A stretch of 41,890 bases of DNA from Octopus bimaculoides (GCF_001194135.2 NC_069004.1:1616823-1658712); one strand, 5' to 3'. Shown: positions 10,663-28,292, counted from the first letter of the stretch. Notes: a model not told the origin generated them from the sequence alone. Numbers and translations: made by a program.

Positions 10663-10955
10663 CAGTCATTTATGACGAAATAATGGAAGCACCTTAAAAT
10701 TTCAAACAAATTTATTTTACTATTGGGTGGGACCGCCTTTGGCAGTAATTACAGCTTGAATTCTACTCGTACAAAGTTTGAATTGTTTAAGGAATTTTCG
10801 TCTTGTAGTGATGATGGTGGAGGATATCGACTCCTGACTTGTTTTTTCTAAAATGCACCATAAATATTCAATAATATTGAGATCTGGGGACTGTGGTGGC
10901 CAGATAAGATGTTCGTCTTCACTAGAATGTTCCTCGTGCCATTCAGTAACAACTT
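10663..10955 (-). mobile_element. Tc1-type (DD34E) transposon 3' remnant
   Basis: The minus strand encodes WPPQSPDLNIIE (10867-10902), then frameshifted RIQAVITAKGGPT*. TIR-like end cagtcatttatgacgaaataatggaagcacc. Confidence 0.85.
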
Positions 10956-10964
10956 TTTATAATA

Positions 10965-11108
10965 CGTCAGCGTAATGTAGCGGTTCGGCAAAAGAGAGCG
11001 ATAGAATAAATACCAGGCTTAAAGAAAAAAGTACTGAGCAGTTCATCTGATTAAAAATTCTTCAAAACTCTTCATTAGCACAGCCAAATGACTGAAACAA
11101 GTAAAAGT
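10965..11108 (+). mobile_element. SINE family B 3' tail fragment
   Basis: agcggttcggcaaaagagagcgatagaataa...aaatgactgaaacaagtaaaag matches 16130-16265. Confidence 0.75.
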
Positions 11109-13020
11109 TTATATATATATATATATATATATTCTCCCACGTACATTCACACACACACACAAACACACACACACACACACACATTACGCAGTATCTGTGA
11201 TTTATTTCTCCTTATGACTGATTCACTGGTCTTGTGTGTCCTGCAGTAGCAAACCCCTCCCTCTTTCTCCTCCTCTCTTCATAACCAAGCAGCTGTTTAA
11301 CCAATGAGGCGTTGCTAATTAACATGGATGACTGATCCTGTAGGTTTGTACTTTAGTAGTAGTAGTAGTAGTAGCTTTAGTCACTTTTGTTCCACCTCAG
11401 ATCTGTTGTGACCATATGATTAGTGTTCTAGCGTTCCAGACATGACCACATCGTCTTATTTACAAACAATACATAGAAGATATATTTTTCAATGTCCTTT
11501 AAAAACCATAAGACTTGTCTCGATTGAAATTTGTCGCCGGACGATTAGCCATGTAGAAGTCCATTACATGACCTCACTCAAGATTGTTGTTATTGTTGTT
11601 GCTGTTGTTTAACCCTAGGTCATCTCTGGTTGAACAAACATGATCAAAGTCATCCCAGCCATGACCATCTCAGACCACGTTACGCAATATGTTCTTTGTG
11701 ATTTTTATTTTATCAAAGAAAGTACAATGTAAGTCTTGAGGGATTTGGTGGTGGTGGTGGTGGTAGTGGTGGGTGTGGTTGTGGTTGTGGTTGTAGTTGT
11801 GGTAGATACAACTAGAAAAGTAGTGTCAGGTAACGCAGGCTACTTATCACCTGTTCAACGTAAATCATTAAACAATTGATAGAATTTCTCCGCCACCATC
11901 ACCACCACCACCACCACCACCACCACCACCACCTGCCTATTATATGTCTCGAATTAACTATTAGAAACTATGATTAACATACGGAAAAGGAAGAGTTAGC
12001 TGTGTGGGTCATGTTGCCTCACAGATGAACGTGATTGGTGGAGGTTTCTAATTGNNNNNNNNNNNNNNNNNNNNNNNNNNNNNNNNNNNNNNNNNNNNNN
12101 NNNNNNNNNNNNNNNNNNNNNNNNNNNNNNNNNNNNNNNNNNNNNNNNNNNNNNNNNNNNNNNNNNNNNNNNNNNNNNNNNNNNNNNNNNNNNNNNNNNN
12201 NNNNNNNNNNNNNNNNNNNNNNNNNNNNNNNNNNNNNNNNNNNNNNNNNNNNNNNNNNNNNNNNNNNNNNNNNNNNNNNNNNNNNNNNNNNNNNNNNNNN
12301 NNNNNNNNNNNNNNNNNNNNNNNNNNNNNNNNNNNNNNNNNNNNNNNNNNNNNNNNNNNNNNNNNNNNNNNNNNNNNNNNNNNNNNNNNNNNNNNNNNNN
12401 NNNNNNNNNNNNNNNNNNNNNNNNNNNNNNNNNNNNNNNNNNNNNNNNNNNNNNNNNNNNNNNNNNNNNNNNNNNNNNNNNNNNNNNNNNNNNNNNNNNN
12501 NNNNNNNNNNNNNNNNNNNNNNNNNNNNNNNNNNNNNNNNNNNNNNNNNNNNNNNNNNNNNNNNNNNNNNNNNNNNNNNNNNNNNNNNNNNNNNNNNNNN
12601 NNNNNNNNNNNNNNNNNNNNNNNNNNNNNNNNNNNNNNNNNNNNNNNNNNNNNNNNNNNNNNNNNNNNNNNNNNNNNNNNNNNNNNNNNNNNNNNNNNNN
12701 NNNNNNNNNNNNNNNNNNNNNNNNNNNNNNNNNNNNNNNNNNNNNNNNNNNNNNNNNNNNNNNNNNNNNNNNNNNNNNNNNNNNNNNNNNNNNNNNNNNN
12801 NNNNNNNNNNNNNNNNNNNNNNNNNNNNNNNNNNNNNNNNNNNNNNNNNNNNNNNNNNNNNNNNNNNNNNNNNNNNNNNNNNNNNNNNNNNNNNNNNNNN
12901 NNNNNNNNNNNNNNNNNNNGTTACTCGGACATAAATACCAACACTGGTTGTCAAGCGGTGGATGAGGAAACATACACACACACACACACACAAACTCACG
13001 TACATACATACAAACATACA

Positions 13021-13051
<31 letters not shown>

Positions 13052-13065
13052 GTATATATATATGC

Positions 13066-13170
13066 GCAGGCATGGCTGTGTGGTAAGTTGCTTGCTTCAC
13101 AACGACACGGTTTCAGATTCAGTCACACTACGTGACACTTTGGGCGAGTAACTTTTACTATAGCATCGGG
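13066..13170 (+). mobile_element. SINE family B head, diverged
   Basis: gcaggcatggctgtgtggtaag...actttgggcgagtaacttttactatagc matches the head of the 14642-14999 copy. Confidence 0.75.
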
Positions 13171-13237
<67 letters not shown>

Positions 13238-14091
13238 NNNNNNNNNNNNNNNNNNNNNNNNNNNNNNNNNNNNNNNNNNNNNNNNNNNNNNNNNNNNNNN
13301 NNNNNNNNNNNNNNNNNNNNNNNNNNNNNNNNNNNNNNNNNNNNNNNNNNNNAGAGAGAGAGAGAGAGAGAGATAGAGAGGGGTTGGAGAGGGAAAGTGA
13401 AAGAGAAGGAAAGAGAAATACCCATATGCATGTAATGTGTCTATGTCTTTTTTTTTTTTTCTCTCTCATTCACGTGTTACCCCAAAAAAACTCTATCCAA
13501 TCAAACAACTACAAAGAGCAGAAACCGTCCTGTCATCACTCCGTTGCATCGTCATCGGGCGAACGCGTCCGCCACAAGTTGTAACAATAAACATATTATG
13601 ACTCAATAACACCGACCTTCTTTCATCCGTTTCTCCTACTTTGCGTTCATCTCTTTGTTAATTCAGTAACAACGCATTTCTTATTGTCACACTAGTAATA
13701 CCATGTTCACGTGTGTTTGTGTATACATGTGTGCATGTGCATGTGCGTGTGTGTACCTGTATCTATATTTATATCTCTCTATATATATGTGTGTGTGCGT
13801 ATGTGTGTGTGTGCATTGATGACGTCATGAAAATGTTTTCTAAACTTTGGAGAGAAAGTGGAATTATTCTCTTTCGAAACAGTGGATCTCGAAGCACGTA
13901 AAGCTATGAATAATAGCATGAAAATATTGGGTTGAAAAATCCCGTTGGTTAGAAATAGTCGGAAGCTGCTTGTGGGACACGCACCCACATCTGTAGGCAT
14001 TTACATATATGTGTATGTGTATATATACACACACACTCACATATATATACATATATATATACATACATACATACATATCTATATCTATATC

Positions 14092-14123
<32 letters not shown>

Positions 14124-14641
14124 AACACACATATATATACACATATATATTGGTGTTAAATGTGTTGGTGCTAGTATTGGAAATGGCGATGTTGTTAATG
14201 GTGATGATGGTGTCGGTGGTATTGTTATTAAAGGTGGTTTGTGGTGTTAAAAACGGTGATTATTGATGGTGAGGACGGGGCTCCTTATTCCCCAGCTAAG
14301 TAAACTGCGATAAGAAAATTTCATGTGCCTTATCTCGAGATGACGAGAACGAATTATATTTAGTTTGTTATAAGCTTTCAACCCTGTTTTTCTCAGATGT
14401 TTCGCCTCTAAAATAAACTGTCTGTTTGTTAGAACAAACATCTTCAAATAAAGGTCCGATTACTAATCTCATCTACATCTGCAACATTTCATCATTTACT
14501 GTATTCGATGGTGTAAAAGACCACACGGCCAGATTAAACACACCCCAAGTTTCGGCAGTGCACCTCCAGGAAAAGTTTTTAGGAGTAGGCGTGGCAGTGT
14601 GACAGGAAGCTTGCTTCCCAGTCAGATGGTTCGGAGTTCGC

Positions 14642-14714
14642 TAAGTAACGGGGGACGTAAACACACCAGCATCGGCTGTCAAGCGATGTTGGGGGGACAA
14701 ACACAGACACACAA

Positions 14715-14765
<51 letters not shown>

Positions 14766-14999
14766 NNNNNNNNNNNNNNNNNNNNNNNNNNNNNNNNNNN
14801 NNNNNNNNNNNNNNNNNNNNNNNNNTATATATGCATACGACGGGCTTCTTTCAGTTTCCGTCTACCAAATCCACTCACAAGGCTTTGGTCGGCCCGAGGC
14901 TATAGTAGAAGACACTTGCCCAAGGTGCCACGCAGTGAGACCGAACCCGGAGCCATGTGGTTCGTAAGCAAGCTACTTACCACACAGCCACTCCTACGC
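14642..14999 (-). mobile_element. SINE family B (tRNA head, CORE-like domain, internal microsatellite), possibly octopus OR2-like
   Basis: Minus strand: aggagtggctgtgtggtaag, ggttcggtctc, ggcaccttgggcaagtgtcttc (resembles the CORE gaccttgggcaagt motif), then (AT)/(GT)n and tail. Family name from memory, unverified. Confidence 0.85.
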
Positions 15000-15632
15000 T
15001 TATACTATCAAAAGAAGATATTGCGGTCGATAAAATGAAGTACCAACAATACTGAGGTCGATTTAATCGAATTGTGCATTTCCCTAAAAAATTTCCGGTC
15101 TTGGAACCTGAAACGGACCGGTATTCCGTTCAGTTAGGTAGATTACGATTTCGGTCATTTGTACGTCACGGAAGTCGGACATCCGGGCTTTATGCATCTT
15201 AGAGCCCAGGAAAATAATAATAATAATTATAAAAAGATGATTACGGATAAGCTTTCCGGAACAGGATGTCGGATATTGCATATCATCTCATAACACCGCC
15301 GTGTGTGACTGTTATCACGCGTTAATAGTGTCTCCATCGTTAACACGGATACTATCTTGTTAGATCGAGGATGCTGAGGTTTCGAACCCTCGTCAAAGCC
15401 ATTTACTTCACTGATTATATAATAAGGTCCTTAAGAGGGGCATGACCATTACAACCCACCCACACACCCTATAACACCCCACCTATCCACACAAAATGAT
15501 AGAGATCTCGAAATGAAATTGATAGTTCATGGTGATTAAGAAAGTTAACAAAGTTAAGAAATAATTGCAGATAATTAATCGCTGATAATTGTTTAATAGC
15601 CGTGTTAGATTACACAACCATCGATAGCTGTA

Positions 15633-15633
<1 letters not shown>

Positions 15634-15708
<75 letters not shown>
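15634..15708. repeat. (TG)n microsatellite
   Basis: Direct reading of the sequence. Confidence 0.98.
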
Positions 15709-15712
<4 letters not shown>

Positions 15713-15902
15713 CGAGAGTGGGTGATATCGCCATAGGATGGTTCAGTGATACCTGTTATGAAGTAAGATAACAACCGGAGTAGAACTCGCTTAAAGATGG
15801 TGTCTTGGTCACGTGGTGATTGTCGGTGGGTAGGTGAGTGTTTGAGGAACTGGTATGTCTATGTAAGCATGTATATATGTATGAGTGTGTGTGTGTATGC
15901 AT

Positions 15903-15969
<67 letters not shown>

Positions 15970-16021
15970 TATAAAGCCTTGTGAGTGGATTTAGTAGACA
16001 GAAACTCAAAGAAGCCCATCG

Positions 16022-16066
<45 letters not shown>

Positions 16067-16270
16067 TCGTGTGTCTGTGTTTGTTCCTCCCCCCATCATC
16101 GCTTGACAACCAATGTTGGTGTGTTTACGTCCCTGTAACTTAACGGTTCGGCACAAGAGATCCGATAGAATAAGTACCAGGTTTACAAAGAATAAGTCCC
16201 GGGGTCGATTTGTTCGACAAAAAGCATGGCCGCCGTCAAATGAATGAAACAAGTAAAAGAATAAAAGAAT
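15970..16270 (+). mobile_element. SINE family B, 5'-truncated, with internal (GT)n and full tail
   Basis: aaagccttgtgagtggatt...(GT)n...cgcttgacaacc...ggggtcgatttgttcgac...gaaacaagtaaaagaataaaag. Confidence 0.88.
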
Positions 16271-16469
16271 ACTCGTATAACGAACAATTTGGTAAACGAA
16301 CAAGTCTCTGAAGCTGAATGTGTTCGTATAAAGAGACTTCACTGTATATATGTATATACATATGTGAAATATTAAATCAAAAATGAATATGTTTTTTGAA
16401 TTCAATCTTTGCTTTTCGTACTTTCAGAAAGAATGTTATCAGCGTTGCTTGTGAAAAACTTCCTTAAAC

Positions 16470-16545
16470 ATGGCCAGAAAACAATATCACATTCCAAAAG
16501 TAATTCCACCATTTTTTGCAATTCTTTTCGTCGTCTTCACAAATG
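16470..16545 (+). CDS. First coding exon (signal peptide) of a CUB-like/TM receptor gene: MARKQYHIPKVIPPFFAILFVVFTN-G|
   Basis: Pyrimidine-rich acceptor tctttgcttttcgtactttcag ends at 16427. In-frame TGA at 16452 precedes an ATG in strong context (aaacATGG). Basic N-region plus hydrophobic core. Donor G|gtaagt at 16545/16546, phase 1, matches the phase-1 start of the CUB exon. Confidence 0.75.
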
Positions 16546-16722
16546 GTAAGTTCTTCAATCACGTAAGTTCTCGCACCACTCAATAATTTCCCATTTCGCG
16601 TATAACAAGTCTCTTTACCACATGTAATAAATGTCTTTGTCACAGTTAATGTATTCCAATATTTCACTCAATAATTTCCCATTATGAGATGTAATATGTT
16701 TTTTATATGACGTTACGTAATA

Positions 16723-16925
16723 AAGCGGTGAGCTGGCAGAATCGTTAGCAGGCCGGACGAAATGCTTTGCGGTATTTCGTCCGTCACTACGTTCCAAGTT
16801 CAAATTCCGCCGAGGTCGACTTTGCCTTTCATCCCTTTCGGGATCGATAAGGAGTTACCATTTGAGTACTGGGGTCAATGTAATCGACTTACCCCCGTGC
16901 CCCATAACTGCTGACCTTGTTCAAA
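16723..16925 (+). mobile_element. SINE family A
   Basis: Head, B box and core match 7360-7592 in the opposite orientation. Confidence 0.88.
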
Positions 16926-16966
16926 AATTTAAAGCCAATATGAAGTTACGTCGGTAGTTTCTGTAG

Positions 16967-17045
16967 AAGGCGGCAGGCTGGCAGAATCGTCAGCGTGTCA
17001 GACTTTCTTCTGGCTCTTTGAGTTCTGAGTTCGAATCCTGCTGCT
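16967..17045 (+). mobile_element. SINE family A head fragment
   Basis: aggcggcaggctggcagaatcgtcagc...gagttcgaatcc. Confidence 0.65.
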
Positions 17046-17065
17046 ATGCATTTTTTTCGGCATAT

Positions 17066-17577
17066 TGATAATCCTTTCTATTATAGGCCCTAAATTTGGT
17101 GAAAGGGGGTTAGTTTATTACAACGACCCCCAGTGCTCAACTAGTACTTAATTTCATCGATTCCGAAAGGATGAAAGTTGAAGTCCATCACAGTGGGATG
17201 TGAATTCAGAACATAAATACGGACGAAAATGCCGCCATGCATTTCGTCCGGCGTGCTAACGATTCCGCTTGTTCGCTTCTTTGAAAAGGGTCAATAATCC
17301 TCTCAAGTACAGGAACAAGGCCTGACATTCAGTGAAGGGATCAAGTCGATTACATCGACAGGATTAATAATCCATTCTATTATAGACACAAGGCCTGCAA
17401 CTTTGGGGGAGGTGGTTAGTCGACCCCAGTGCGTAACTGGTACTTATTTCATCGACTTTCCAAGGATGAAAGGCAAAGTCATCCTCGACGGAATTTAAAC
17501 TCAAAACGTAAAGACGAACGAAATGCCGCTAAGCATTTTGTCCGGTGCACTAACGATTCTGCCTGTACGCCGCCTTG
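17066..17577 (-). mobile_element. Tandem cluster of three minus-strand family A SINEs (17066-17277, tail fragment 17290-17360, 17365-17577)
   Basis: Repeated heads (ctaacgattc), cores (aaggatgaaag) and the tail variant ctattatag..acaaggcctg. Confidence 0.85.
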
Positions 17578-18127
17578 AAGACTTCAATGCCCTAAAAAAA
17601 TGTTTTTCTTGAATAGTAAATGAAAATTATGCTATCAAAGAATATTTAAGTTCCTATGGTGACCCATATGCTGAAACGGTAAATACACAAATATGTCAAA
17701 ACAAGTGCATATTAAATAAAAGCTACTTTGCAAATACATTTTGGCTGTAGAAATATCTTAACAATGGGAAAAATATGCAATTTATTTACACTGAATTCGT
17801 TTTAATTGTGAGAGTGGATAACGTCTAAGGATATAAATATATTTATATTGTTATATATAATAGATTTGAATGTGTTATTATGTATTTCAACTAAAAGGTT
17901 TATTGTTGCTTGATGCGTAGAGGTGGATTTTCAGGAATATCGTTATATTTTGAAGAGAATTTTGGAATTTAAAAAAAATGTTATTGTGATTCCTGTTAAC
18001 TTGGTGTGATTCAAATATATTCATAAACACGTATTCTTAAATATAAATATGGTGATACACAACTCACTCACGAATAGAAATACAACCCACTCACGAATAG
18101 AAATACAACCATATGCAATGGCATATA

Positions 18128-18563
18128 CAGGGAGTTCGAAGTAAATTTGACGATTTGTATGTCTCCATTTTCCAGGGACAGTCTGATGTTTTGTTCAAAG
18201 GCTAACGATGTTTGAGAACGTAAAGATTAAAGTTGAGAAAAAGTTAGCTGACATGGAGTATTGGAAGCCATCTGAATATTGGAAAAGAGTTATTCGTATC
18301 ATGACGATTCGCGCCTAGTATCAATATGTCGACATCATGATTGCTGCTCAATGCTCTGTGAACATTGTAAAGGCTGTAAAAAGCATCATGGACAGCTACA
18401 AAGGAAACTAAGAAACCATGGCCAGCAGGAAGGGACACAGCAAGCGTTCTGAATGCCTCTGCACGCCGGAATTCATCCGGCAGTTGACTAAATTCAGACG
18501 ATTATGTGAAGCCGCTGGAGACTGTTGTCAAACCATGGCTGCGGATAGTTGCTTCTGGAAGGC
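18128..18563 (+). mobile_element. maT/DD37D-like Tc1-mariner 5' remnant with internal deletion
   Basis: TA|cagggagttcgaag terminus. Decayed N-terminus MEYWKPSEYWKR...RKGHSKRSECLCTPEFIRQL joins at about 18486 to catalytic-domain RLNSDDYVKPLETVVKPWLRIVASGR, which normally precedes the xWQQD motif. Confidence 0.75.
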
Positions 18564-18840
18564 TCCTTGCCAAATCTCTGGAAAGTGTCAGAAGGTTTGC
18601 AAATCTAACGGAGGCCTCAAAAGACATTTTAAGATCCACAAAAATCAGAACTTATCTGCAGCTCTTGGTGGTCCAAATCGGATGTGCAATTTATGTGGAT
18701 GTCTTTTCAGAATATTGTCTGGTTTAAAAAGCCACATCAGATGCCATCATGGTTCTAAGGTGTTGGTACAGGAGGTGGTGACCAAACTCTGCATAAGGAG
18801 TAGACGACCACCATCATGTATGTATGTATCTATGTATGTA
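18564..18840 (+). mobile_element. 3' end of a non-LTR element (RTE-like) with two C2H2 fingers and a (TGTA)n tail
   Basis: CQKVCKSNGGLKRHFKIH and CNLCGCLFRILSGLKSHIRCH lack TGEKP linkers and end directly in a tetranucleotide tail. The clade assignment is inference. Confidence 0.6.
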
Positions 18841-20149
18841 TTCATGTGTGTGTGAGTTTCTCTCTCTCTCTCTCTCTCTCTCTACATACATATATATATA
18901 TACATAAACACACTCACACATACACACACACACATATATTTCTACAAACATGCATATATGTAAATAAATATGTATATATATGTGTATGTATGTTTGTGTC
19001 TATGTATGTATGTGTGTGTGTGAGTGTATGTATGTATGTATGTATGTATGTATGTATGTATGTATGAATGTGCGTATGTAAGCACTTAGTAAGCGTCTTT
19101 TTAAAAGGACCCTGATACGTTTCCTGATTTCCTGGTTGAACTCTGACCCCGGGTGTATTTGGTGACAATACACGCGTCCATAAAAAGTGTTACAACCGAT
19201 ATTAACAAGATTTCGGTGTGTTTGATGTGTGTGAATCAGCGTGCAATATAACGCCGCGTAAAAGCTGTCCTCAAAGTCAAGTAGCAGCTCTTGTCTCAAT
19301 GGACTCAGATCTGTGACAGGAAACGTAAGAACGAGAATTAGCTAACGTTTGCCATGCTTATTATGGAGGAAGCTAAGTAATCTGAAGAATGAATACAGCA
19401 CTGTGAAAATAATATAGAAATAAGGAGATAACTATCGCATTTTAAATGAAATAATTACTAAAACACAACACTGAAATATAAACCTTTGTTTAACGGTTGA
19501 AAACCAGTTAGCTATTTTTCTGAATCATCAACTCTTCTTAATTTGGAAGCGTTTCCATTTTGTTTGCTTATCGTGTGTTCTAGTTCACACTGCGCAAACT
19601 TTGAGTATTCTATTTTATTCCTTTTTCTTTCTCGTTATTTCATACAAAAGGCCTCTCTGAACAAACTACAAAGATTTATCTAAAAATAAATAACCTATTT
19701 AATATTAATTCTAATTAGTCATTAGCATAACAAACTATTCTAACAGCCACACAGTTTCTTTTTACAGATTTCGCCAGATAGAATCGACTTCACGTTAAAA
19801 TTAATTAATTTTTTTTCTTTGTTTCTAATCAACTCTCTTTACTTAATTAGTACAGATACTAATTATATTAATATTAATTACTAACCAATTTGACGACACG
19901 TTTTCGTGCCATCTGAAGTCCTAACGTCTTGGGTGTTATCATTAGCAAGTCTCACAGCCCAGATATTTATATCCGTAAATAGATATGTCTTGCAGACGGG
20001 ACACTGTAGAATTAACGAAGTGTTATTGTTAACATGCAATATTAAATTCAAATAGTCATATTTCACTGGAGAAAATATTCATGTTTCAAACTCAGTTTGT
20101 TGTTGTTGTTGTTGTTTGGTCTAATTTAAAAACCGTCCAGTTAATTCTT

Positions 20150-20452
20150 CATTGAACACGTCCTCCGTCGGTTACGACGATGACTATTCCAGTTGATGTG
20201 ATCAACAGAACTGCCTGCTCGTGAAATTAACGTGAAACGTGTACCCTTAACATAGTTCTCAGGGAGATTCAGTGTGACACAGAGTGTGACAAGGCTGGCC
20301 CCTTTGAATTACAGGTACAACTCATTTTTGCCAGATGAGTGCACTGCAGCAACATGAAATAAAGTGTCTTGCTCAAGGACACAATGCACTGCCAGGAATT
20401 GAACTCATTACTTTACAATCGTGAGCCGAACGCCCTGACCACAAAGCCGCCT
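20150..20452 (-). mobile_element. tRNA-derived SINE family C (CORE/V-like central domain)
   Basis: Minus strand: ggctttgtggtcagggcgttcggctc, gagttcaattcc (B box), gtgtccttgagcaagacacttt. Confidence 0.75.
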
Positions 20453-21477
20453 ACCATCACAATTTTTCATTATACAAAATTAACTAAAAGCATATTCCGT
20501 AAACATGTTCGTTAGATTTTATAAAAATCTAAATTTTTTTTTAATGTCTTTTCAGGAGTTCAAACAGAGATGGAGAGTCTGTANNNNNNNNNNNNNNNNN
20601 NNNNNNNNNNNNNNNNNNNNNNNNNNNNNNNNNNNNNNNNNNNNNNNNNNNNNNNNNNNNNNNNNNNNNNNNNNNNNNNNNNNNNNNNNNNNNNNNNNNN
20701 NNNNNNNNNNNNNNNNNNNNNNNNNNNNNNNNNNNNNNNNNNNNNNNNNNNNNNNNNNNNNNNNNNNNNNNNNNNNNNNNNNNNNNNNNNNNNNNNNNNN
20801 NNNNNNNNNNNNNNNNNNNNNNNNNNNNNNNNNNNNNNNNNNNNNNNNNNNNNNNNNNNNNNNNNNNNNNNNNNNNNNNNNNNNNNNNNNNNNNNNNNNN
20901 NNNNNNNNNNNNNNNNNNNNNNNNNNNNNNNNNNNNNNNNNNNNNNNNNNNNNNNNNNNNNNNNNNNNNNNNNNNNNNNNNNNNNNNNNNNNNNNNNNNN
21001 NNNNNNNNNNNNNNNNNNNNNNNNNNNNNNNNNNNNNNNNNNNNNNNNNNNNNNNNNNNNNNNNNNNNNNNNNNNNNNNNNNNNNNNNNNNNNNNNNNNN
21101 NNNNNNNNNNNNNNNNNNNNNNNNNNNNNNNNNNNNNNNNNNNNNNNNNNNNNNNNNNNNNNNNNNNNNNNNNNNNNNNNNNNNNNNNNNNNNNNNNNNN
21201 NNNNNNNNNNNNNNNNNNNNNNNNNNNNNNNNNNNNNNNNNNNNNNNNNNNNNNNNNNNNNNNNNNNNNNNNNNNNNNNNNNNNNNNNNNNNNNNNNNNN
21301 NNNNNNNNNNNNNNNNNNNNNNNNNNNNNNNNNNNNNNNNNNNNNNNNNNNNNNNNNNNNNNNNNNNNNNNNNNNNNNNNNNNNNNNNNNNNNNNNNNNN
21401 NNNNNNNNNNNNNNNNNNNNNNNNNNNNNNNNNNNNNNNNNNNNNNNNNNNNNNNNNNNNNNNNNNNNNNNNNNNNN

Positions 21478-21509
<32 letters not shown>

Positions 21510-22265
21510 TTATATTATATAAAGAGAGATGGAAAGAGGAAGGAAGAGGAAGATTTGAGAGTGAAAGATCTGACATATTAGGTACATATGTGTGTGTGTG
21601 TGTGTGTGTTGGACATCAGTCATGTGAGTAAAAGATGTATATTTTTTGCATCAGTTTTTATCTGTTGCCATACTTTGATAAGTTGTACTCTAGATGTCTG
21701 TTTCTAAAGATAAATAATCACAAATGATGTTTAATTAAAATAATCTTGTTACTTCTTTAGTTTCAAAATGTAGGTGGAGATAAATATAGAACGAGGTTTA
21801 TGTCTACTCTCTCTTTCTCCCTCTTTCTGTCTGTCTGTCTCTCTCTCTCTCTCCCCAGCTACACTTGCATTTTTACACACATACACGCACATATACATAC
21901 TCATACACACACACACATATTTAAAACCTGTATTTATTAAATGATACTCATCTCCTGCCAGATGGAATATTTTTTTGCTGATTCTACGGATAATGGAACA
22001 GTACATTATATATATATATATATGTAATGGACGGGTGAATTGTTATTTTAACAATGGGGTGGGGAATGTACTCGGATTGTTTATTTTTATGAAAAGCTGA
22101 ACATTTTTTTTATTTGAAACCCTGAGCATCACGCTAGCAATAATTGAAACGACTGAAGTGTTACGTGGGCCATACGTTACATTTAAGAATCATACATACA
22201 ACTGCATTGCCAACATCAAATCTAAGTTAATAAACTCAAGTGAAAATGAGCTCGATAGATAATAT

Positions 22266-22298
<33 letters not shown>

Positions 22299-22301
<3 letters not shown>

Positions 22302-22404
22302 GTTCTTGTATGAGTACAGTCCCCCCGTCCCTCACTCCGTACAATTCCAGTGATATTGTCTCGTATTGTTTTCCACAGAAAGCAACATCATTCCNNNNNN
22401 NNNN

Positions 22405-22453
<49 letters not shown>

Positions 22454-22546
22454 GTTCTTGTATGAGTACAGTCCCCCCGTCCCTCACTCCGTACAATTCC
22501 AGTGATATTGTCTCGTATTGTTTTCCACAGAAAGCAACATCATTCC
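22299..22546 (+). other. Identical 96-bp duplication across a 10-N gap (probable assembly false duplication)
   Basis: 22299-22394 equals 22451-22546. Both follow (TG)n, and the first copy stops abruptly at the gap. Confidence 0.75.
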
Positions 22547-22896
22547 ATTCTGCAGTTCTGGTAAAAAGAGAGGAAAAACAGTTTTCATCGGAAACAAGAA
22601 CTACCCGGAATCTATTACAGGAGGCATTCACGAGTGTCACTGCCAAGTATATTCAGGATTTGGCAGCAGAATTACTCTCCATGCTGTGGACATCACAATA
22701 AGCTCCAGTAGCGAATTGGTATGTCAGAAAGGTTTAAAGATTTCGGATGTTCATGGCGAAGAAATTGAGATTGGCTGTGGATATAAAGGTCTATACGGAT
22801 TCCGTACAATTTACCAGAAAGGAGCAAACAATTTGACCGTAACGCTTTACAGTCTGTCAGAAGACTCTCGTGGGTATGTTTGGCTGCAAGCTAAAG
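22531..22896 (+). CDS. CUB-like domain exon (366 nt, phase 1-1)
   Basis: Acceptor ttgttttccacag at 22530, donor AAAG|gtaagt at 22896. The frame shows CUB hallmarks: C..(N)YP..C, RITLHAVDITI, C..L.I.D, CG, NNLTVTL, GYVWL. Confidence 0.85.
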
Positions 22897-22949
22897 GTAA
22901 GTTGCCTTCTGCACATCTCTATATAGTTTTGTCTGTGTGTCTGTGTGGT

Positions 22950-23035
22950 AAAGAGGTTTGCTTCTTGTTGACATAGCTTCGGGTTCAGGCCCACTTCCTG
23001 GTACCTTGGGTCGAGTAAAGCCATGTGAGTAGATC
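22950..23035 (+). mobile_element. Degenerate SINE family B head
   Basis: cgggttcaggcccact..ggtaccttggg...aaagccatgtgagtagat. Confidence 0.6.
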
Positions 23036-23039
23036 TATG

Positions 23040-23232
23040 TGCCAGCATAACGTGGCAGTCCTGTAAAGGACGATGTTACTGTTGTAAGACTAGAGATGGG
23101 AGCGATGACCTCCCTTGCAAATGCTATATACGGACACAGACAGTGTGTCGTTAGTCAGCTGGAAAAGATGTTTTCCTGGGGCTAAAACAACAGTAACGAC
23201 GTCGTTTATAGGACTACCACGTTATGTTGGCA
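23040..23232. mobile_element. MITE with ~48-bp terminal inverted repeats
   Basis: Left arm tgccagcataacgtggcagtcctgtaaaggacgatgttactgttgt pairs with right arm acaacagtaacgacgtcgtttataggactaccacgttatgttggca. TA lies at or near both ends. Confidence 0.8.
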
Positions 23233-23384
23233 TAGAAACATTACTATCTGGTACTGTTACTGTATTTCTATCGCTCAGAGATTTAAATATATATATTCAA
23301 GTAGTCATTTTACCTTGTCCTTATTCTAAGTGCAAGTTTTGAAGTGTGCACTTCGATTTTAACAATTATTTTTTCAAAACTATA

Positions 23385-23901
23385 ATGGAAGTGACAAAGT
23401 TGCATATTCGACATATTTTGCTCTATGAGTTCAATAAAGACAACAACGCAATGGAAAGTGCGAGGAATATTAATGCAGTATATGCGGATCGGACAATAAG
23501 CGTAAGCTAGTGTCAATGGTAGTTCCAGAAATTCTGAGCTGGAAACTATAGCCTAGAAGACGAGCCTCGTCTTGCAAGATCTGTAGAGCTCGACGAGGAC
23601 GTCCTGCAAACCCGAGCTCGGCCACATACAGCGAGGATGATATTCCAAAGGCTGGAGCAATTTGAATGGGAATGATGCTTCACCCACCATATTGGCCAGA
23701 CATTGCCCCATCTGATTATCATTTATTTTATAATCTTCAAAATCATTTGGACGGAAAAAGTATAGATTCTGTAGATGAGGTCAGAAGAGTACTGGAATGA
23801 GTATTTTTCGTCATGGACAAGTGAATTTTGGAAGAGGGGCCTTGCATGTCTACCCGATAGATAGAAGAGCATTGTAGAGAATGAGGGAGAGTGTATTTTA
23901 G
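23385..23901 (+). pseudogene. Internally deleted mariner transposase pseudogene
   Basis: HTH N-terminus MEVTKLHIRHILLYEFNK...SLEDEPR, fused to (N)ARPH, HPPYWPDIAPSDYHLF and FWKRGL..LPDR. Several stops and frameshifts. Confidence 0.9.
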
Positions 23902-23955
23902 ATTTCCTTGATTTTTCCATGTTATCAGTACATTTATTAATTTATTTCTGTTCAG

Positions 23956-23994
23956 CGGTGGAGAAAGAGGATTATGTCATCGTTGAATGCCATG
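23956..23994 (+). CDS. Start of exon 3 (runs into N-gap): (A)VEKEDYVIVECH
   Basis: Acceptor ttaatttatttctgttcag at 23955. Phase-1 join to exon 2 gives WLQAK-A-VEKEDYVIVECH and supplies a sixth Cys. The 3' end is lost in gap 23995-24498. Confidence 0.7.
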
Positions 23995-24573
23995 NNNNNN
24001 NNNNNNNNNNNNNNNNNNNNNNNNNNNNNNNNNNNNNNNNNNNNNNNNNNNNNNNNNNNNNNNNNNNNNNNNNNNNNNNNNNNNNNNNNNNNNNNNNNNN
24101 NNNNNNNNNNNNNNNNNNNNNNNNNNNNNNNNNNNNNNNNNNNNNNNNNNNNNNNNNNNNNNNNNNNNNNNNNNNNNNNNNNNNNNNNNNNNNNNNNNNN
24201 NNNNNNNNNNNNNNNNNNNNNNNNNNNNNNNNNNNNNNNNNNNNNNNNNNNNNNNNNNNNNNNNNNNNNNNNNNNNNNNNNNNNNNNNNNNNNNNNNNNN
24301 NNNNNNNNNNNNNNNNNNNNNNNNNNNNNNNNNNNNNNNNNNNNNNNNNNNNNNNNNNNNNNNNNNNNNNNNNNNNNNNNNNNNNNNNNNNNNNNNNNNN
24401 NNNNNNNNNNNNNNNNNNNNNNNNNNNNNNNNNNNNNNNNNNNNNNNNNNNNNNNNNNNNNNNNNNNNNNNNNNNNNNNNNNNNNNNNNNNNNNNNNTCT
24501 CTCTCTCTCTCACTCTCTCTCTCACCACACATTTTTGTTTATTTCTCGCTGACCAAACACCACAAACTGTCCT

Positions 24574-24612
<39 letters not shown>

Positions 24613-24661
24613 CTGTCGTTGTTGATGCTTGGTTACTATAGTTACGACGTCTCCATTGCAG

Positions 24662-24743
24662 TTTATGCTATCGGTGGTGCAGCTGCAGCGATTCTCTTGA
24701 TTCTGGTCCTGGCCTTGATTGGAATAGTTTTGTATTGTCGAAG
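24662..24743 (+). CDS. Transmembrane exon: (V)YAIGGAAAAILLILVLALIGIVLYCR-R|
   Basis: About 23 hydrophobic residues followed by YCRR. Donor AG|gtaagt is phase 2 and matches the last exon. The 5' boundary is uncertain: AG at 24660-61 (phase 1) or 24640-41 (phase 2). Confidence 0.8.
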
Positions 24744-25295
24744 GTAAGTAACGAACCCTGATTGCTTCGTCCTTTGGCAGAAATGCTTTCATCTGAAGAA
24801 CGTCTCTTAACTCATTCTCATTTAAATCGTGCATATTTTTATATGCAACACCTATAATATATTTATGTGGACCATGGCAAAATGTAAAAAACATCAAATG
24901 TGAACTACAACAAAAAAAAAAGATACCATTCCAATACAGAAAAAGATGAGAGGATTTTACAGCTGGAAGGCTTTTGATCATAGATTTGCCTGTTTTGGAC
25001 TGACCTAGGGCTAAAAAAAAACAACTACAACCACAAGAGAAATAGAAAAAGTGTAGATGTCATCAACATTAATTAACAAATAGTTTTATTTATCTGGGGG
25101 TTTTTTCTGCATTCTGGACACAGTTATTACAAGGGAGATAATCATTTCTTCATGATATTTAGTGGGATTAGAATTTTGAATTTGAAATTAAGGAAGTATA
25201 AGGAAAAAATACATAGAATTAGATTTAGAAAATTACTATTTGTAAATCTCACAACGAGAGATATTCAACAGCAGTACTTTGGAGTTAAGATTATT

Positions 25296-25400
25296 TGCCA
25301 ACATAACATGGCAGTCCTGATTTAGGATTAATGTTTCTGTAATTTAGCCCCTGGAGACATCGTCTCCAGCTGGCTATACAACACGATCTGTGTCCTTATA
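25296..25400. mobile_element. Partial copy of the 23040-23232 MITE, inverted relative to it
   Basis: tgccaacataacatggcagtcct...tttagcccctggagacatcgtctccagctgg...tctgtgtcc aligns to the reverse complement of 23128-23232. Confidence 0.7.
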
Positions 25401-25451
25401 TTTTCATTATTCTTTTGATTGTAATCATTTTCTTTCTGGTGTTCTTTGCAG

Positions 25452-26409
25452 AGTGAAAAAAAGGAAGAGAAGATTGTCTCAGCTTCAAAAATCATCCGTT
25501 TTCAATCCTTCAAAACTAGAAAACAAGCAAGACCCTTATAACTATAATGAAGATCATTACATCTCCATTCGTCGAAGTCCTCTCAGGGTTTCCACTTACA
25601 GCACTTTGCAAGCTGTCACTAAAAAGAAACCACCCAACTCCTTTGATCGAAGACACAGCGATCAAAATGGTGAGCTAAGTAACCATTACTTAAATGAGTT
25701 TGAAATGACAAATATTCCAGAAGAAACATCTGTTGATCCCATTGGTTCGTTAGCCAGGAAATCAACCAAGATTCCAAAATACGAGATGTCTTCCTGTCAA
25801 GAAGCAGATACACTTCCAGGCAATAGCCATTATGCTAACATAACATTTTCTGCACCTCCCAGTGAACAAAATACACTTAGACGCAACAAAACCAGCTTTT
25901 CGTCTCAGCCATCATGTGACAATGAGAAGCTGGAATTTCTTCCTCCTCCTTTAGAATCATTTTTGTCTGACGATGACAAGGACATGTATTATCCCACATC
26001 TCATAATACACCACCGATTTCGCCAATGACAGTTGACAACTATGATTGCAATTCTTCAAGGCAAGGTGAATACTACAAGACTCCGGTCATCCATCCGATC
26101 TATGATACCGTATCAGAGGACCAAAATTTTCTTCCTTCACCAACATTCCAAAATGATAACTATCTCATCAGGGAAAATCTCCCTGCTGCTAAGGCAGACT
26201 TGACCTATGACCTGAATGTAGAGAATGGTAACATCCCTCAAGGAAACTTTCTTGAACCAAACCATTATAAAATACCAAGGCAAACATCAAACAGTAACTT
26301 TATTTTCCCTCCGCCACCTTCTCCAACAGACTTTAACGATGACTTATATAATTCAAACGTCTACTGTGAAATGCAATTAGGTTCAGATAAAAATGATAAT
26401 TATAATTAA
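25452..26409 (+). CDS. Terminal coding exon: ~319-aa cytoplasmic tail starting RVKKRKRR
   Basis: Acceptor ttttctttctggtgttctttgcag at 25451. Long uninterrupted non-repetitive ORF to TAA at 26407-26409. Polybasic stop-transfer segment. About 19 Tyr and several Pro-rich motifs. Confidence 0.88.
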
Positions 26410-26560: not shown

Positions 26561-27504
26561 TTGGGATTACTTCAGTAGAATTCTGGAATGAAAGTTATCA
26601 AATGTATATAATAACATTAAATACTACTATTGTGAAAAAAAGAAAAAAAGAAAATAAAAAAGGAAAACGTTAGCAGTAAGAGAATATTACAAATCAAACA
26701 AAATCAAACTTCATCCCAGATTATCTCATAATCCAACATCACACTCTTAACAGTGGGTTTTTTTTTTCATGTACAGCTTATTCACCCAACCAAATAGACA
26801 TATTTTGAATCCTCATCATGCATGAGTGAAGCTTCAAATTCTTCAAGAATAACTCTGCTCAAAGCCACTTGTGGGGTTTAATTATTCATCTTTAACACCA
26901 ATCGATCTAAAATCAATTGGTTGCTCTCACAACTATACACTAAACCTCACTTAACCCTGTGCCACCATAAAGCAGATCACAGCTACGACTTGTCTCAGAT
27001 TCAGGTCAAGGAATATCGAAATAGTTCGCATTTTACATAAAGTCTACTTTTTCTATTGAAATATGATATTTTTGGTAATTGATATGGTATTGTTATTTGT
27101 CAATGGTGTTTCAATTGTTTTTTTTTTTCATATATATATTTTTTTTAATAGTATATGCAGTCTAAATTATTTATTTATTCAAATGGAAACATTTTGTGAC
27201 ATTTATGATTGCAAAGGTCTGTATGAACGTCTTAATGTCTTTTTGAAAATAAACGTGTCAACAACTTCAAGACGCTTTTTAAATCACATTTTCTTTCTGT
27301 TTTTATCTGGAGCCATCATCATCATCTAATGGTTGGGTGCCTTTCCTGTCACCAATCCTCACCTGTTTCCAAACAAGGTCAAAATATTAGAAATTGACAC
27401 CGCTTGTATCATAGGCTGTGACGCACATTTACAACTATCACATGATATAAAAGAAAGAGCCACAAACACACACATGCGCACACACAATATTCTTACATAC
27501 ATTT

Positions 27505-27622
27505 ATATGACAAGCTTCTTTCAGTTTCCATCTACCAAATCCACTCACAAGGATTTGGTCAGCCTTGAGCTATAGTTGAAGACACTCAAAGTACCACACA
27601 ATGGAACTGAACCAGGAACCAT
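27505..27622 (-). mobile_element. SINE family B fragment
   Basis: gcttctttcagtttccatctaccaaatccactcacaagg matches 14840-14885. Confidence 0.8.
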
Positions 27623-28292
27623 AGTGATTGGTCACCATGCTGAAAGCTTGTAGCCCCAACAACAGCATTCGTTTCTCCACATGTATGAAGTAAATTAATG
27701 AATCTCACGAGACGACTATTGTCCTCCATAAATAACAATGGTGGCGAAAGCGATGAAAGCAGACAAAAAGGAAACCGCTGAACATTTCTAAAGTACTTTT
27801 ATGTAAATTGTTCTTCCCTTTTATTTCAAAAGAATATAGTTCATAGTTCGGTGTCGATGTGAAAATTTACCGATGAATTATTCAGTTCTGACTAACAAGC
27901 ATGGCGAGTGTCGAGTGTCGTTGAGTAGACACAGGCTGACTTTTGCTAAACTTTTGCTAAATTTGAATCTCTTATACGATTTTGATATGCCAGAAATGAA
28001 ATATTCTATCAACTCATCAATTTCGAGATCTTGGTATATGTCGTTGATGGAAGAGTATGGATGTGCAGTTCGTAACTAAGTGGTTGCTAGTTCGATCCCG
28101 ATCTATAATATAATAGCTACACATTTGGCAAACTAATAGCATGTGAGTGAAATTAAAAAGACAGCATCTCTACAGAAACACTTCATGTACACTTGAGTGT
28201 GTATGTATGTATGTATATACATATATATATATATATATATANNNNNNNNNNNNNNNNNNNNNNNNNNNNNNNNNNNNNNNNNNNNNNNNNNN

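What the first reader, a model, noticed from the sequence alone, without database searches (positions are those of the whole stretch)
16428..26409. Unrecognised single-CUB type-I membrane receptor with a long phosphotyrosine-docking tail
Five exons with canonical GT-AG sites assemble into signal peptide, CUB-like domain, TM and ~319-aa disordered tail. Phases match wherever checkable; the exon 3-4 junction is hidden by a gap. The layout recalls CUB-TM signalling scaffolds such as DCBLD1/2, CDCP1 and NETO, but lacks their extra ectodomains and known sequence. It could be a lineage-specific lophotrochozoan or cephalopod receptor for immune recognition or cell guidance. The ORF track shows only pieces of it.
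Basis: partly seen in the sequence, partly recalled or inferred. Interest (0 to 1): 0.8.

Follow-up and report, generated by a model that had tools for sequence, protein, structure and literature searches.

The report
Octopus lectin-CUB membrane receptor gene
This is a real but badly annotated octopus gene for a cell-surface protein with a sugar-lectin-type domain, a CUB domain, one membrane span and a long tyrosine-rich tail; it belongs to an unstudied family found in molluscs, annelids, nemerteans and brachiopods.

Summary
The window is Octopus bimaculoides chromosome CM046624.1. It carries a conserved multi-exon gene for a type I membrane protein.

The middle domain is a true but divergent CUB. 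The TM and the 319-aa tail are as described.

It starts at 20556 and is cut off after 28 nt by the gap at 20584. In the gap-free, syntenic O. vulgaris locus this 354-nt exon encodes a SUEL-type (rhamnose-binding-lectin fold) domain. The protein is therefore SP–SUEL–CUB–stalk–TM–tail, about 686 aa, not "single-CUB without extra ectodomains".

The second large gap hides most of the 219-nt stalk exon. O. vulgaris shows that the frame continues across it. The 10-N gap sits between two copies of an artefactual 94-nt duplication.

dN/dS between the two octopus species is 0.054.

About 100 representative relatives were found. All are "uncharacterized", and every one I looked up is lophotrochozoan.

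RefSeq annotates only the last two exons (LOC106875887).

The function is inferred, not shown: probably a non-catalytic receptor or co-receptor that recruits adaptors through conserved tail motifs. Interest is moderate.

The parts
16470..16545 (+). Exon 1 (CDS part). MARKQYHIPKVIPPFFAILFVVFTN + first base of a Gly codon. It is a signal peptide with a basic n-region and a 13-residue hydrophobic core. The donor is G|GTAAGT, phase 1.
   Evidence: It is 24/25 identical to the start of O. vulgaris CAI9739977.1 (P0014), where it is joined to the SUEL domain. The 5' UTR extent is unknown. There is an out-of-frame ATG at 16433.
20556..20583 (+). Exon 2, readable start only. The acceptor is ttttcag|GA and the sequence encodes (G)VQTEMESL. 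The remaining ~326 nt of the 354-nt SUEL-type lectin exon lie in the gap 20584-21477.
   Evidence: The window is colinear with O. vulgaris L007 up to the gap edge. L007 exon 17058-17411 encodes the whole domain. It is a SUEL fold: Pfam 18/28 members, AF2 pLDDT 95, and Foldseek hits to latrophilin Lec, CSL3 and SUL-I.
20584..21477 (.). Assembly gap that hides most of exon 2 and about 2 kb of intron 2.
   Evidence: The flanks map to L007 17085 and 19476.
22301..22404 (.). Artefactual duplicate of 22453-22546 plus the 10-N gap. It contains a spurious second copy of the exon-3 acceptor and the first 24 nt of the exon.
22531..22896 (+). Exon 3. It encodes a divergent CUB domain (366 nt, phase 1 in and out).
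   Evidence: It is 96% identical in protein to O. vulgaris, with dS 0.39 and dN 0.018.
23956..23994 (+). Exon 4, readable start only. It encodes (A)VEKEDYVIVECH, the conserved 'DYVxIxC' strand after the CUB, then an acidic stalk. The remaining 180 nt are in the gap.
   Evidence: The O. vulgaris exon is 22621-22839 (219 nt, phase 1-1).
23995..24497 (.). Assembly gap that hides the rest of exon 4 and part of intron 4.
24662..24743 (+). Exon 5. It encodes the transmembrane helix (V)YAIGGAAAAILLILVLALIGIVLYCR, entering in phase 1 and leaving in phase 2.
   Evidence: The acceptor was chosen from the phase of the O. vulgaris stalk exon. There are 0 non-synonymous and 6 synonymous differences from O. 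vulgaris.
25452..26409 (+). Exon 6. It encodes the basic stop-transfer (RVKKRKRR) and the 319-aa cytoplasmic tail. The tail has 20 Tyr, the conserved block YNYNEDHYISIRRSPLR, then HYANITF, HPIYDTV, PPPP and NVYCEM. The stop is TAA at 26407-26409.

Best explanation
**Shown.** The region holds one six-exon protein-coding gene of Octopus bimaculoides. It is the full form of the truncated RefSeq model LOC106875887. It encodes a type I membrane protein. In order, the parts are a cleavable signal peptide, a SUEL-type (rhamnose-binding-lectin fold) domain, a divergent CUB domain, a short Cys-containing strand with an acidic stalk, one TM helix with a GGAAAA small-residue face, and a ~320-aa low-complexity cytoplasmic tail. 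Two exons are mostly lost in assembly gaps and are read from the syntenic O. vulgaris locus. The gene is under strong purifying selection. It belongs to an uncharacterised family found in molluscs, annelids, nemerteans and brachiopods.

**Inferred.** The protein has no catalytic domain. It therefore most likely works as a non-enzymatic receptor, co-receptor or adhesion molecule. The rigid SUEL-CUB tandem would bind an extracellular ligand, a protein or a glycan. The tail would recruit cytoplasmic adaptors. The candidate motifs are the family-wide acidic Tyr cluster Y-[DN]-Y-[DN]-[ED]-D-x-Y-x-S-I-x-R-S-P about 40 residues below the membrane, further conserved Tyr motifs (YxN, YDTV/YDN[IL], YxxM), and, in gastropods, a C-terminal -ETGV PDZ ligand. 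These would act after phosphorylation by a partner kinase.
For: **Gene structure**
- Splice sites and phases.
- Identity of the window with GCA_001194135.2 CM046624.1.
- O. vulgaris gap-free syntenic locus with a clean 686-aa six-exon model.
- O. vulgaris model P0014 joins the identical signal peptide to the SUEL domain and the stalk.
- 736-aa uninterrupted ORFs with the same architecture on 3-5 kb transcript-like contigs of a related taxon.

**Selection**
- dN/dS is 0.054 overall. For the tail alone, dN is 0.013 against dS 0.228.

**Domains**
- CUB.
- SUEL.

**Family**
- Exhaustive HMMER gave 99 representatives at E<1e-3.
- Names and taxa.

**Tail**
- Conserved motifs.
- 11 tail Tyr are invariant among the four close sequences (two octopus, two from related taxa), while the octopus tail is only about 33% identical to P0003.

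**Mechanism by analogy (established knowledge)**
- Latrophilin Lec domains bind teneurin or TOL-1 as proteins (the PDB entries hit).
- CUB-TM proteins such as neuropilin, NETO and DCBLD act as co-receptors.
Against: - There is no expression, localisation, ligand or phosphorylation data for any family member. Literature searches found nothing.
- No octopus transcript spanning the junctions was available. Exons 2 and 4 of this species are inferred from O. vulgaris.
- The window's own CUB gets no direct Pfam hit.
- The close orthologues replace the Asp of the canonical 'C-x-D-W-L' Ca2+-site strand (CQKGL). Classic Ca2+-dependent CUB binding may therefore not apply.
- The second pan-mollusc tail block (KSVTFSQPVAMVTPLPSGSEES) is degenerate in Octopus.
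- Cephalopods lack the PDZ ligand.
- Short linear Tyr motifs occur by chance in Tyr-rich sequence.
Confidence: 0.55

Rival explanations
1. It is an immune pattern-recognition receptor. The SUEL lectin domain binds rhamnose- or galactose-containing microbial glycans, and the tail triggers phagocytosis or signalling in haemocytes.
For: - The fold is SUEL, and the Foldseek hits include the rhamnose-binding lectins CSL3 and SUL-I.
- A review notes that one bivalve SUEL lectin agglutinates Gram-negative bacteria via LPS (PMC8878817).
- The family has expanded into several subfamilies in bivalves, as immune families often do.
- There is an ITIM-like STYSTL motif.
Against: - The octopus pair shows strong purifying selection (dN/dS 0.054), not the diversification typical of immune recognition genes.
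- The lectin domain is only a weak Pfam SUEL match in the P0003 orthologue used as proxy (E 2.6e-3 to 0.13).
- Sugar-contact residues were not tested.
- The best structural matches are the latrophilin Lec domains, which use this fold for protein ligands.
Confidence: 0.2
2. It is an auxiliary subunit of an ion channel or neurotransmitter receptor, in the manner of the CUB-TM proteins NETO1/2, SOL-1 and LEV-10. The PDZ ligand would anchor it at synapses.
For: - The CUB model matches Neto2 in GluK2 complexes (7f57, 7f59, TM 0.67-0.68).
- Gastropod orthologues end in -ETGV, and a second subfamily ends in -TKF or -TKL, which are class I PDZ ligands.
- It is a single-pass protein with a CUB close to the membrane.
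Against: - There is no LDLa domain and no second CUB.
- Cephalopod members lack a PDZ ligand.
- Neto ranks below many complement CUBs.
- No co-expression or interaction data exist.
Confidence: 0.1
3. One reading: a single-CUB receptor made by splicing exon 1 directly to the CUB exon. The SUEL exon would be lost or skipped in O. bimaculoides.
For: - Exon 1 to exon 3 is in frame, because exon 2 is phase 1-1.
- The O. vulgaris gene model P0014 itself skips one symmetric exon, the CUB exon, so exon skipping is conceivable.
Against: - The first 28 nt of the SUEL exon, with its acceptor, are present and conserved at 20556-20583, right up to the gap.
- O. vulgaris has the intact exon.
- Nearly all full-length relatives carry SUEL and CUB in tandem.
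- P0014 is a prediction, not a transcript.
Confidence: 0.07
4. It is a pseudogene or a chance ORF assembly, or an artefact of the gapped assembly.
For: - There are three gaps inside the locus.
- RefSeq could only model the last two exons.
- There is an artefactual duplication at 22301-22404.
Against: - dN/dS is 0.054 with dS about 0.26.
- The 686-aa ORF is intact in O. vulgaris.
- Full-length ORFs sit on transcript-like contigs of a related taxon.
- About 100 relatives were found.
Confidence: 0.02

Closest known systems
EVA-1 (C. elegans) / EVA1C (vertebrates)
   Same: It is a type I membrane protein whose ectodomain starts with a SUEL-type lectin domain next to a second small globular domain, followed by a stalk, one TM and a non-catalytic tail. 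From established knowledge, EVA-1 works as a co-receptor for Slit/Robo.
   Different: EVA-1/EVA1C has two SUEL domains and the EVA1/FAM176 region. Here the second domain is a CUB, and no EVA1 Pfam match was found. The tails share no similarity.
Latrophilin (ADGRL) Lec/RBL domain
   Same: It is the best structural match for the N-terminal domain (6vhh, 8djg, 5afb, 8suf, 2jx9; E 7e-5 to 6e-4). It is an example of the SUEL fold used for protein-protein recognition (teneurin, TOL-1).
   Different: Latrophilins are adhesion GPCRs with olfactomedin, HormR, GAIN and 7TM parts. This protein has a single TM and a CUB.
Neuropilin / DCBLD1-2 (ESDN) / CDCP1
   Same: They are CUB-containing single-pass scaffolds without enzymatic activity. 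Their tails carry Tyr motifs or PDZ ligands and they act as co-receptors. The CUB model matches the neuropilin CUBs 6gh8 and 4gza.
   Different: There are no FA58C/discoidin, LCCL or MAM domains and no triple-CUB array. There is no detectable tail homology. The added SUEL domain is absent from all of them.
NETO1/2, SOL-1, LEV-10
   Same: The CUB is close to the membrane, the protein is single-pass, and some family members carry a PDZ ligand. There is a structural match to Neto2 (7f57, 7f59).
   Different: There is one CUB instead of two to four, no LDLa, and a far longer tail. No link to channels is known.
Short SUEL-CUB-TM proteins of Lophotrochozoa (e.g. Owenia A0A8S4Q285, Tubulanus XP_074660860, Lingula LOC106154093, Haliotis/Patella ~370-aa proteins)
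   Same: They have the same SP-SUEL-CUB-stalk-TM order and are detectably homologous over both domains.
   Different: Their domains are canonical enough to pass Pfam (PF02140 + PF00431). Their tails are short (~50-70 aa) and lack the YDYDDDHY...RSP block. They are also uncharacterised.

Membership tests
CUB domain (Pfam PF00431) | Direct match to the Pfam CUB profile above threshold | tested here: not met
   The window's domain gives 0 Pfam hits even at E<=10. The PDB sequence profile also finds nothing.
CUB domain (Pfam PF00431) | Homology to bona fide CUBs through intermediate sequences or profile-profile comparison | tested here: met
   13 of 46 aligned family members hit PF00431 (best 1e-16). 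hhalign of the close orthologues against the canonical-looking members gives probability 96.7% and E 4.5e-10.
CUB domain (Pfam PF00431) | CUB beta-sandwich fold | tested here: met
   The AF2 model has pLDDT 94.7 and pTM 0.88 with nine strands. Foldseek top hits are MASP-1 CUB2, C1r/C1s, MASP-2, TSG-6, neuropilin and Neto2, with TM up to 0.76.
CUB domain (Pfam PF00431) | Ca2+-binding acidic triad of the cbCUB subset | tested here: inconclusive
   In the hhalign columns the Asp of 'C-x-D-W-L' is Q/K in the close orthologues (CQKGL), while an E-D-S remains near 'F-S-D-x-S'. No coordinates were inspected.
SUEL-type / rhamnose-binding lectin domain (PF02140) | Profile match and fold | tested here: met
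   This was tested on orthologues, because only 9 residues are readable in the window. 18 of 28 members hit PF02140 (best 8.8e-8; P0003 2.6e-3). The AF2 model has pLDDT 95. The top 13 Foldseek hits are latrophilin Lec, CSL3 and SUL-I.
SUEL-type / rhamnose-binding lectin domain (PF02140) | Conserved sugar-contact residues / carbohydrate binding | not tested
   No residue-level comparison with CSL3 or latrophilin sugar sites was made. It needs structural superposition and binding assays.
SUEL-type / rhamnose-binding lectin domain (PF02140) | Presence of the domain's exon in this window | tested here: inconclusive
   The acceptor and the first 28 nt are present at 20556-20583. The rest is inside gap 20584-21477.
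DCBLD1/2 (ESDN) | CUB + LCCL + discoidin (FA58C) ectodomain | tested here: not met
   There is no LCCL or FA58C Pfam hit in the window model or the 736-aa orthologues at E<=10.
CDCP1 | Three CUB-like domains and homologous tail | tested here: not met
   There is a single CUB. No vertebrate protein appeared among the looked-up hits of the exhaustive profile search, which included the tail.
NETO1/2 | Two CUBs + LDLa + TM | tested here: not met
   There is one CUB and no LDLa hit.
EVA-1 / EVA1C | Two SUEL domains and the EVA1/FAM176 region | tested here: not met
   There is one SUEL followed by a CUB, and no EVA1-family Pfam hit.
Lophotrochozoan SUEL-CUB-TM long-tail family (unnamed; e.g. M. gigas K1QS15, Haliotis XP_046330053, Pomacea XP_025097751) | SP-SUEL-CUB-'DYVxIxCG'-stalk-TM order plus the juxtamembrane block Y[DN]Y[DN][ED]D.Y.SI.RSP | tested here: met
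   The alignments show it. The E-values are 3e-93 to 7e-61 for the mollusc orthologues. The window has YNYNEDHYISIRRSPLR and VEKEDYVIVEC.

The most novel reading that the evidence does not exclude
The gene represents a previously undescribed receptor family that may be specific to Lophotrochozoa. A SUEL-lectin/CUB recognition module would be wired to a conserved acidic poly-Tyr docking block, plus a PDZ ligand in gastropods. That would be a lineage-specific co-receptor for cell-cell recognition, for example neural wiring or self/non-self recognition, with no counterpart in ecdysozoans or deuterostomes.
Probability: 0.3. Interest if true: 0.55.

Novelty: new variant of a known kind. Interest (0 to 1): 0.38.

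Why it matters
**Practical value.** The work corrects a truncated RefSeq model in O. bimaculoides and a split model in O. vulgaris. It also shows that two assembly gaps hide coding exons.

**Biological value.** It defines a conserved, wholly unstudied family of single-pass receptors across molluscs, annelids, nemerteans and brachiopods. The family combines two well-known recognition folds, SUEL lectin and CUB, in an arrangement that the literature searches here did not find described. It has a strongly constrained cytoplasmic motif. According to a 2022 review (PMC8878817), the role of SUEL-type lectins in lophotrochozoans is still 'elusive'. A membrane-anchored signalling form gives a concrete handle for ligand hunts and knock-outs in tractable molluscs. 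Nothing here points to a new mechanism, so the value is moderate.

Tried and rejected
- **Four-exon model (1-3-5-6, 493 aa).** It is in frame. I rejected it as the full product once the 736-aa orthologues and O. vulgaris showed two more exons.
- **TM-exon acceptor at 24642 (phase 2).** Rejected, because the O. vulgaris stalk exon ends in phase 1.
- **Reading the poly-Leu/poly-Thr microsatellite 24575-24612 as coding stalk.** Rejected. It lies upstream of the acceptor, and its Thr frame ends in a stop.
- **Direct Pfam and PDB sequence searches of the CUB exon.** Nothing was found.
- **tblastn of the SUEL domain against the readable window.** Nothing was found, because the exon is in the gap.
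- **Chromosome-level O. bimaculoides record.** It is the same sequence with the same gaps.
- **Logan contig for P0002.** It is genomic and covers the last exon only.
- **Word-index searches.** They were much less sensitive than the exhaustive HMMER run.
- **Literature searches by locus names, SRA run and domain combination.** They found no study of the family.
- **Species of origin of P0003/P0004.** It could not be determined. They come only from Logan assemblies of SRA runs.

Full report
**Where the window comes from.** The window has 37% G+C and 19 N-gaps. Positions 14625-36409 are identical to Octopus bimaculoides GCA_001194135.2, chromosome CM046624.1, 1631447-1653231, including the same gaps. 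The public chromosome-level record therefore cannot fill them.

I read the sequence directly and spliced it in a script. That gives these CDS exons:
- 16470-16545: MARKQYHIPKVIPPFFAILFVVFTN, donor G|GTAAGT, phase 1.
- 22531-22896: acceptor ccacag|, donor G|GTAAGT, phase 1 in and out.
- 23956-23994: acceptor gttcag|, phase 1 in, encodes (A)VEKEDYVIVECH, then N.
- 24662-24743: acceptor ttgcag|, donor G|GTAAGT, phase 1 in and 2 out, encodes the TM helix.
- 25452-26409: acceptor ttgcag|, phase 2 in, stop TAA.

**What is already annotated.**
- RefSeq has only 'uncharacterized protein LOC106875887', 358 aa. This is the TM plus the tail. Its first 12 residues are read from intron sequence at 24625-24661.
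- Two 736-aa proteins, P0003 and P0004, come from Logan assemblies of SRA runs. They are about 50% identical over the CUB exon and about 33% over the tail.
- They sit as single uninterrupted ORFs on 3-5 kb contigs, which look like transcripts.
- They carry about 110 extra Cys-rich residues before the CUB and about 80 residues between the CUB and the TM.

**The missing exon.**
- An exhaustive HMMER search of 1.84 billion representatives found 99 relatives at E<1e-3.
- One of them, P0014, is O. vulgaris CAI9739977.1. It starts with the same signal peptide (24/25 identical). It continues into the Cys-rich domain and then into 'MEKEDYVIVECHEDGVVV…'.
- Its genomic locus, L007 from GCA_951406725.2, has no gaps and is colinear with the window.
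- In L007 I could write a clean six-exon, all GT-AG, 686-aa model:

| Exon | L007 coordinates | Length | Content |
|---|---|---|---|
| 1 | 10001-10076 | 76 nt | signal peptide |
| 2 | 17058-17411 | 354 nt | SUEL-type lectin |
| 3 | 21068-21433 | 366 nt | CUB |
| 4 | 22621-22839 | 219 nt | stalk |
| 5 | 23518-23599 | 82 nt | TM |
| 6 | 23864-24827 | 964 nt | tail |

- The window matches L007 up to the very last base before the first large gap (20116-20583 = L007 16614-17085).
- The window contains the acceptor and the first 28 nt of exon 2 at 20556-20583 (GVQTEMESL). It resumes only at L007 19476.
- So the gap 20584-21477 hides 326 nt of coding sequence.
- Likewise the gap 23995-24497 hides 180 nt of exon 4.
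- The O. vulgaris exon 4 ends in phase 1. That selects the acceptor at 24662 over the alternative at 24642.
- The 10-N gap at 22395-22404 sits between two exact copies of a 94-nt segment, and O. vulgaris aligns to only one of them. It is a scaffolding artefact and does not affect the CDS.
- Exons 2, 3 and 4 are all phase 1-1.

**Is the gene functional?** I compared O. bimaculoides with O. vulgaris over all readable exons.

| Region | dS | dN | Note |
|---|---|---|---|
| All readable exons | 0.258 | 0.014 | dN/dS 0.054 |
| CUB exon | 0.389 | 0.018 | |
| Tail exon | 0.228 | 0.013 | |
| TM exon | 0.333 | 0 | 0 non-synonymous, 6 synonymous differences |

The supposedly disordered tail is as constrained as the folded domain.

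**The CUB claim.**
- Pfam gives no hit for the window's domain. A PDB sequence profile gives none either.
- However, 13 of 46 aligned family members hit PF00431, best 1e-16.
- hhalign of the 16 close orthologues against the 8 canonical-looking members gives 96.7% probability and E 4.5e-10.
- An AF2 model of the window's exon has pLDDT 94.7. Its best PDB matches are all CUBs: MASP-1 CUB2, C1r/C1s, MASP-2, TSG-6, neuropilin and Neto2, with TM up to 0.76.
- It is a genuine but divergent CUB.
- In the close orthologues the Asp of the 'CxDWL' strand is replaced (CQKGL). Ca2+-dependent binding is therefore doubtful. This is an inference.

**The hidden N-terminal domain.**
- 18 of 28 members hit PF02140 SUEL_Lectin.
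- The AF2 model, built on the P0003 orthologue, has pLDDT 95.
- Its top 13 PDB matches are latrophilin Lec domains, CSL3 and SUL-I.
- Jackhmmer within the family shows SUEL and CUB in tandem in nearly all full-length members.

**The family.** Every relative I looked up is lophotrochozoan and is annotated 'uncharacterized' or 'hypothetical'.
- Long-tail orthologues occur in Crassostrea/Magallana (K1QS15), Haliotis, Pomacea, Lymnaea and Plakobranchus.
- A second long-tail subfamily ending in -TKF or -TKL occurs in Mizuhopecten and others.
- Shorter forms occur in Mytilus, Lottia, Patella, Gigantopelta, Solemya and Sinanodonta. Outside the molluscs they occur in the annelid Owenia, the nemertean Tubulanus and the brachiopod Lingula.
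- UniProt's automatic names for some of these proteins ('SUEL-type lectin domain-containing', 'CUB domain-containing') agree with the domain calls.
- I found no paper on any of these loci or on the domain combination.
- A 2022 review states that the role of SUEL lectins in lophotrochozoans 'remains elusive' (PMC8878817).

**The tail.**
- The O. bimaculoides tail has 20 Tyr and is rich in S, P, N, D and E.
- The only block conserved across all long-tail molluscs lies about 40 residues below the membrane: Y-[DN]-Y-[DN]-[ED]-D-[HRK]-Y-x-S-I-x-R-S-P-[LM]-[KR]. In Octopus it reads YNYNEDHYISIRRSPLR.
- A second block, K[ST]V[TS]FSxPxAxVTPLxSxSEES, is degenerate in Octopus.
- The four close sequences (two octopus, two from related taxa) share HYAN[IV]TF (YxN), HP[IV]YD[TI]V, HYK.P, a poly-Pro run and NVYC[EQ]M (YxxM). 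Eleven Tyr are invariant among them.
- Gastropod orthologues end in -YETGV, a class I PDZ ligand. The two octopus orthologues and P0003/P0004 do not.
- These features fit a phospho-dependent docking scaffold. No phosphorylation or binding has been shown.

**Most likely mechanism.**
- Shown: the architecture, the folds, the conservation and the absence of any catalytic domain.
- Inferred: the protein is a non-enzymatic surface receptor or co-receptor. Its SUEL-CUB tandem binds an extracellular protein or glycan. Its tail recruits SH2/PTB/PDZ-type adaptors after phosphorylation by a partner kinase.
- The closest working analogues are EVA-1/EVA1C (SUEL-SUEL-TM co-receptor), neuropilin, DCBLD and CDCP1 (CUB scaffolds), and NETO (CUB auxiliary subunits).
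- It is not a member of any of these. The defining extra domains (LCCL, FA58C, LDLa, second SUEL, EVA1 region) were sought and not found.
- Rivals are an immune glycan receptor, a channel auxiliary subunit, a SUEL-less isoform as the main product, and a pseudogene. They are weighed in the rival list.

**Verdict.**
The gene and the five exons are real, but a sixth exon and a second ectodomain were missed because of a gap.
- Novelty: a new variant of a known kind. Known domains appear in an arrangement I did not find described, in an unstudied family that looks restricted to lophotrochozoans.
- Interest is moderate (0.38). The annotation fix is useful and the family is a reasonable target, but nothing mechanistically surprising has been shown.

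Noticed in passing
window 22301-22404: There is an exact 94-nt duplicate of 22453-22546 next to a 10-N gap. It copies the exon-3 acceptor and the first 24 nt of the exon. O. vulgaris aligns to only one of the two copies, so it is a scaffolding artefact that could mislead gene predictors.
   Followed up: yes
window 23288-23901 (intron 3): This is a mariner/Mos1 transposase remnant. 23343-23507 hits PF17906 HTH_48 at 8.7e-12, and a C-terminal transposase-like piece lies at 23666-23797. The whole segment has no counterpart in the O. vulgaris locus, so it is a lineage-specific insertion or deletion.
   Followed up: partly
window 24625-24661: The N-terminus of RefSeq LOC106875887 (MLGYYSYDVSIA) is translated from intron sequence upstream of the true TM-exon acceptor at 24662.
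   Followed up: yes
L007 (O. vulgaris OX597837.1) 10001-24827: The O. vulgaris annotation splits the orthologue into two models. CAI9739977.1 holds exons 1, 2 and 4, skips the CUB exon and ends before the TM. A separate 236-aa model covers part of the tail.
   Followed up: partly
window exons 2-4 (20556-, 22531-22896, 23956-): All three ectodomain exons are symmetric phase 1-1 (354, 366 and 219 nt in O. vulgaris). Each domain can therefore be skipped in frame. Whether SUEL-less or CUB-less isoforms exist is unknown.
   Followed up: no
window 24575-24612: An (ACT)n microsatellite lies just upstream of the TM exon. It is also present in O. vulgaris, mixed there with ACC units. It reads as poly-Leu, poly-Thr or poly-Tyr depending on frame, and could be mistaken for a mucin-like stalk.
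   Followed up: partly
window 41353-41889 (-): This open frame hits reverse transcriptase (PF00078 RVT_1, 4.9e-7). It is a retroelement fragment at the window's end.
   Followed up: partly
window 14826-15003; also 35382-35529, 27497-27641, 13060-13171(-): This is a SINE-like dispersed repeat of about 150-180 nt, 78-87% identical between copies. Several copies also occur in the O. vulgaris locus.
   Followed up: partly
window 18412-18852 (+), intron 1: This 147-codon open frame has a weak C2H2 zinc-finger match (E 0.009, below the Pfam cut-off). It is probably a decayed transposon or pseudogene fragment.
   Followed up: partly
window 16433: An out-of-frame ATG lies 37 nt upstream of the start codon. 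It opens a 38-codon uORF that ends at the exon-1 donor.
   Followed up: no
relatives P0006, P0008, P0009, P0011, P0013 (gastropods); P0032, P0037, P0052, P0069: Gastropod orthologues end in -(Y/F/V)ETGV. A second subfamily ends in -TKF or -TKL. These are class I PDZ-ligand-like C-termini, and they are absent from the octopus orthologues and from P0003/P0004.
   Followed up: partly
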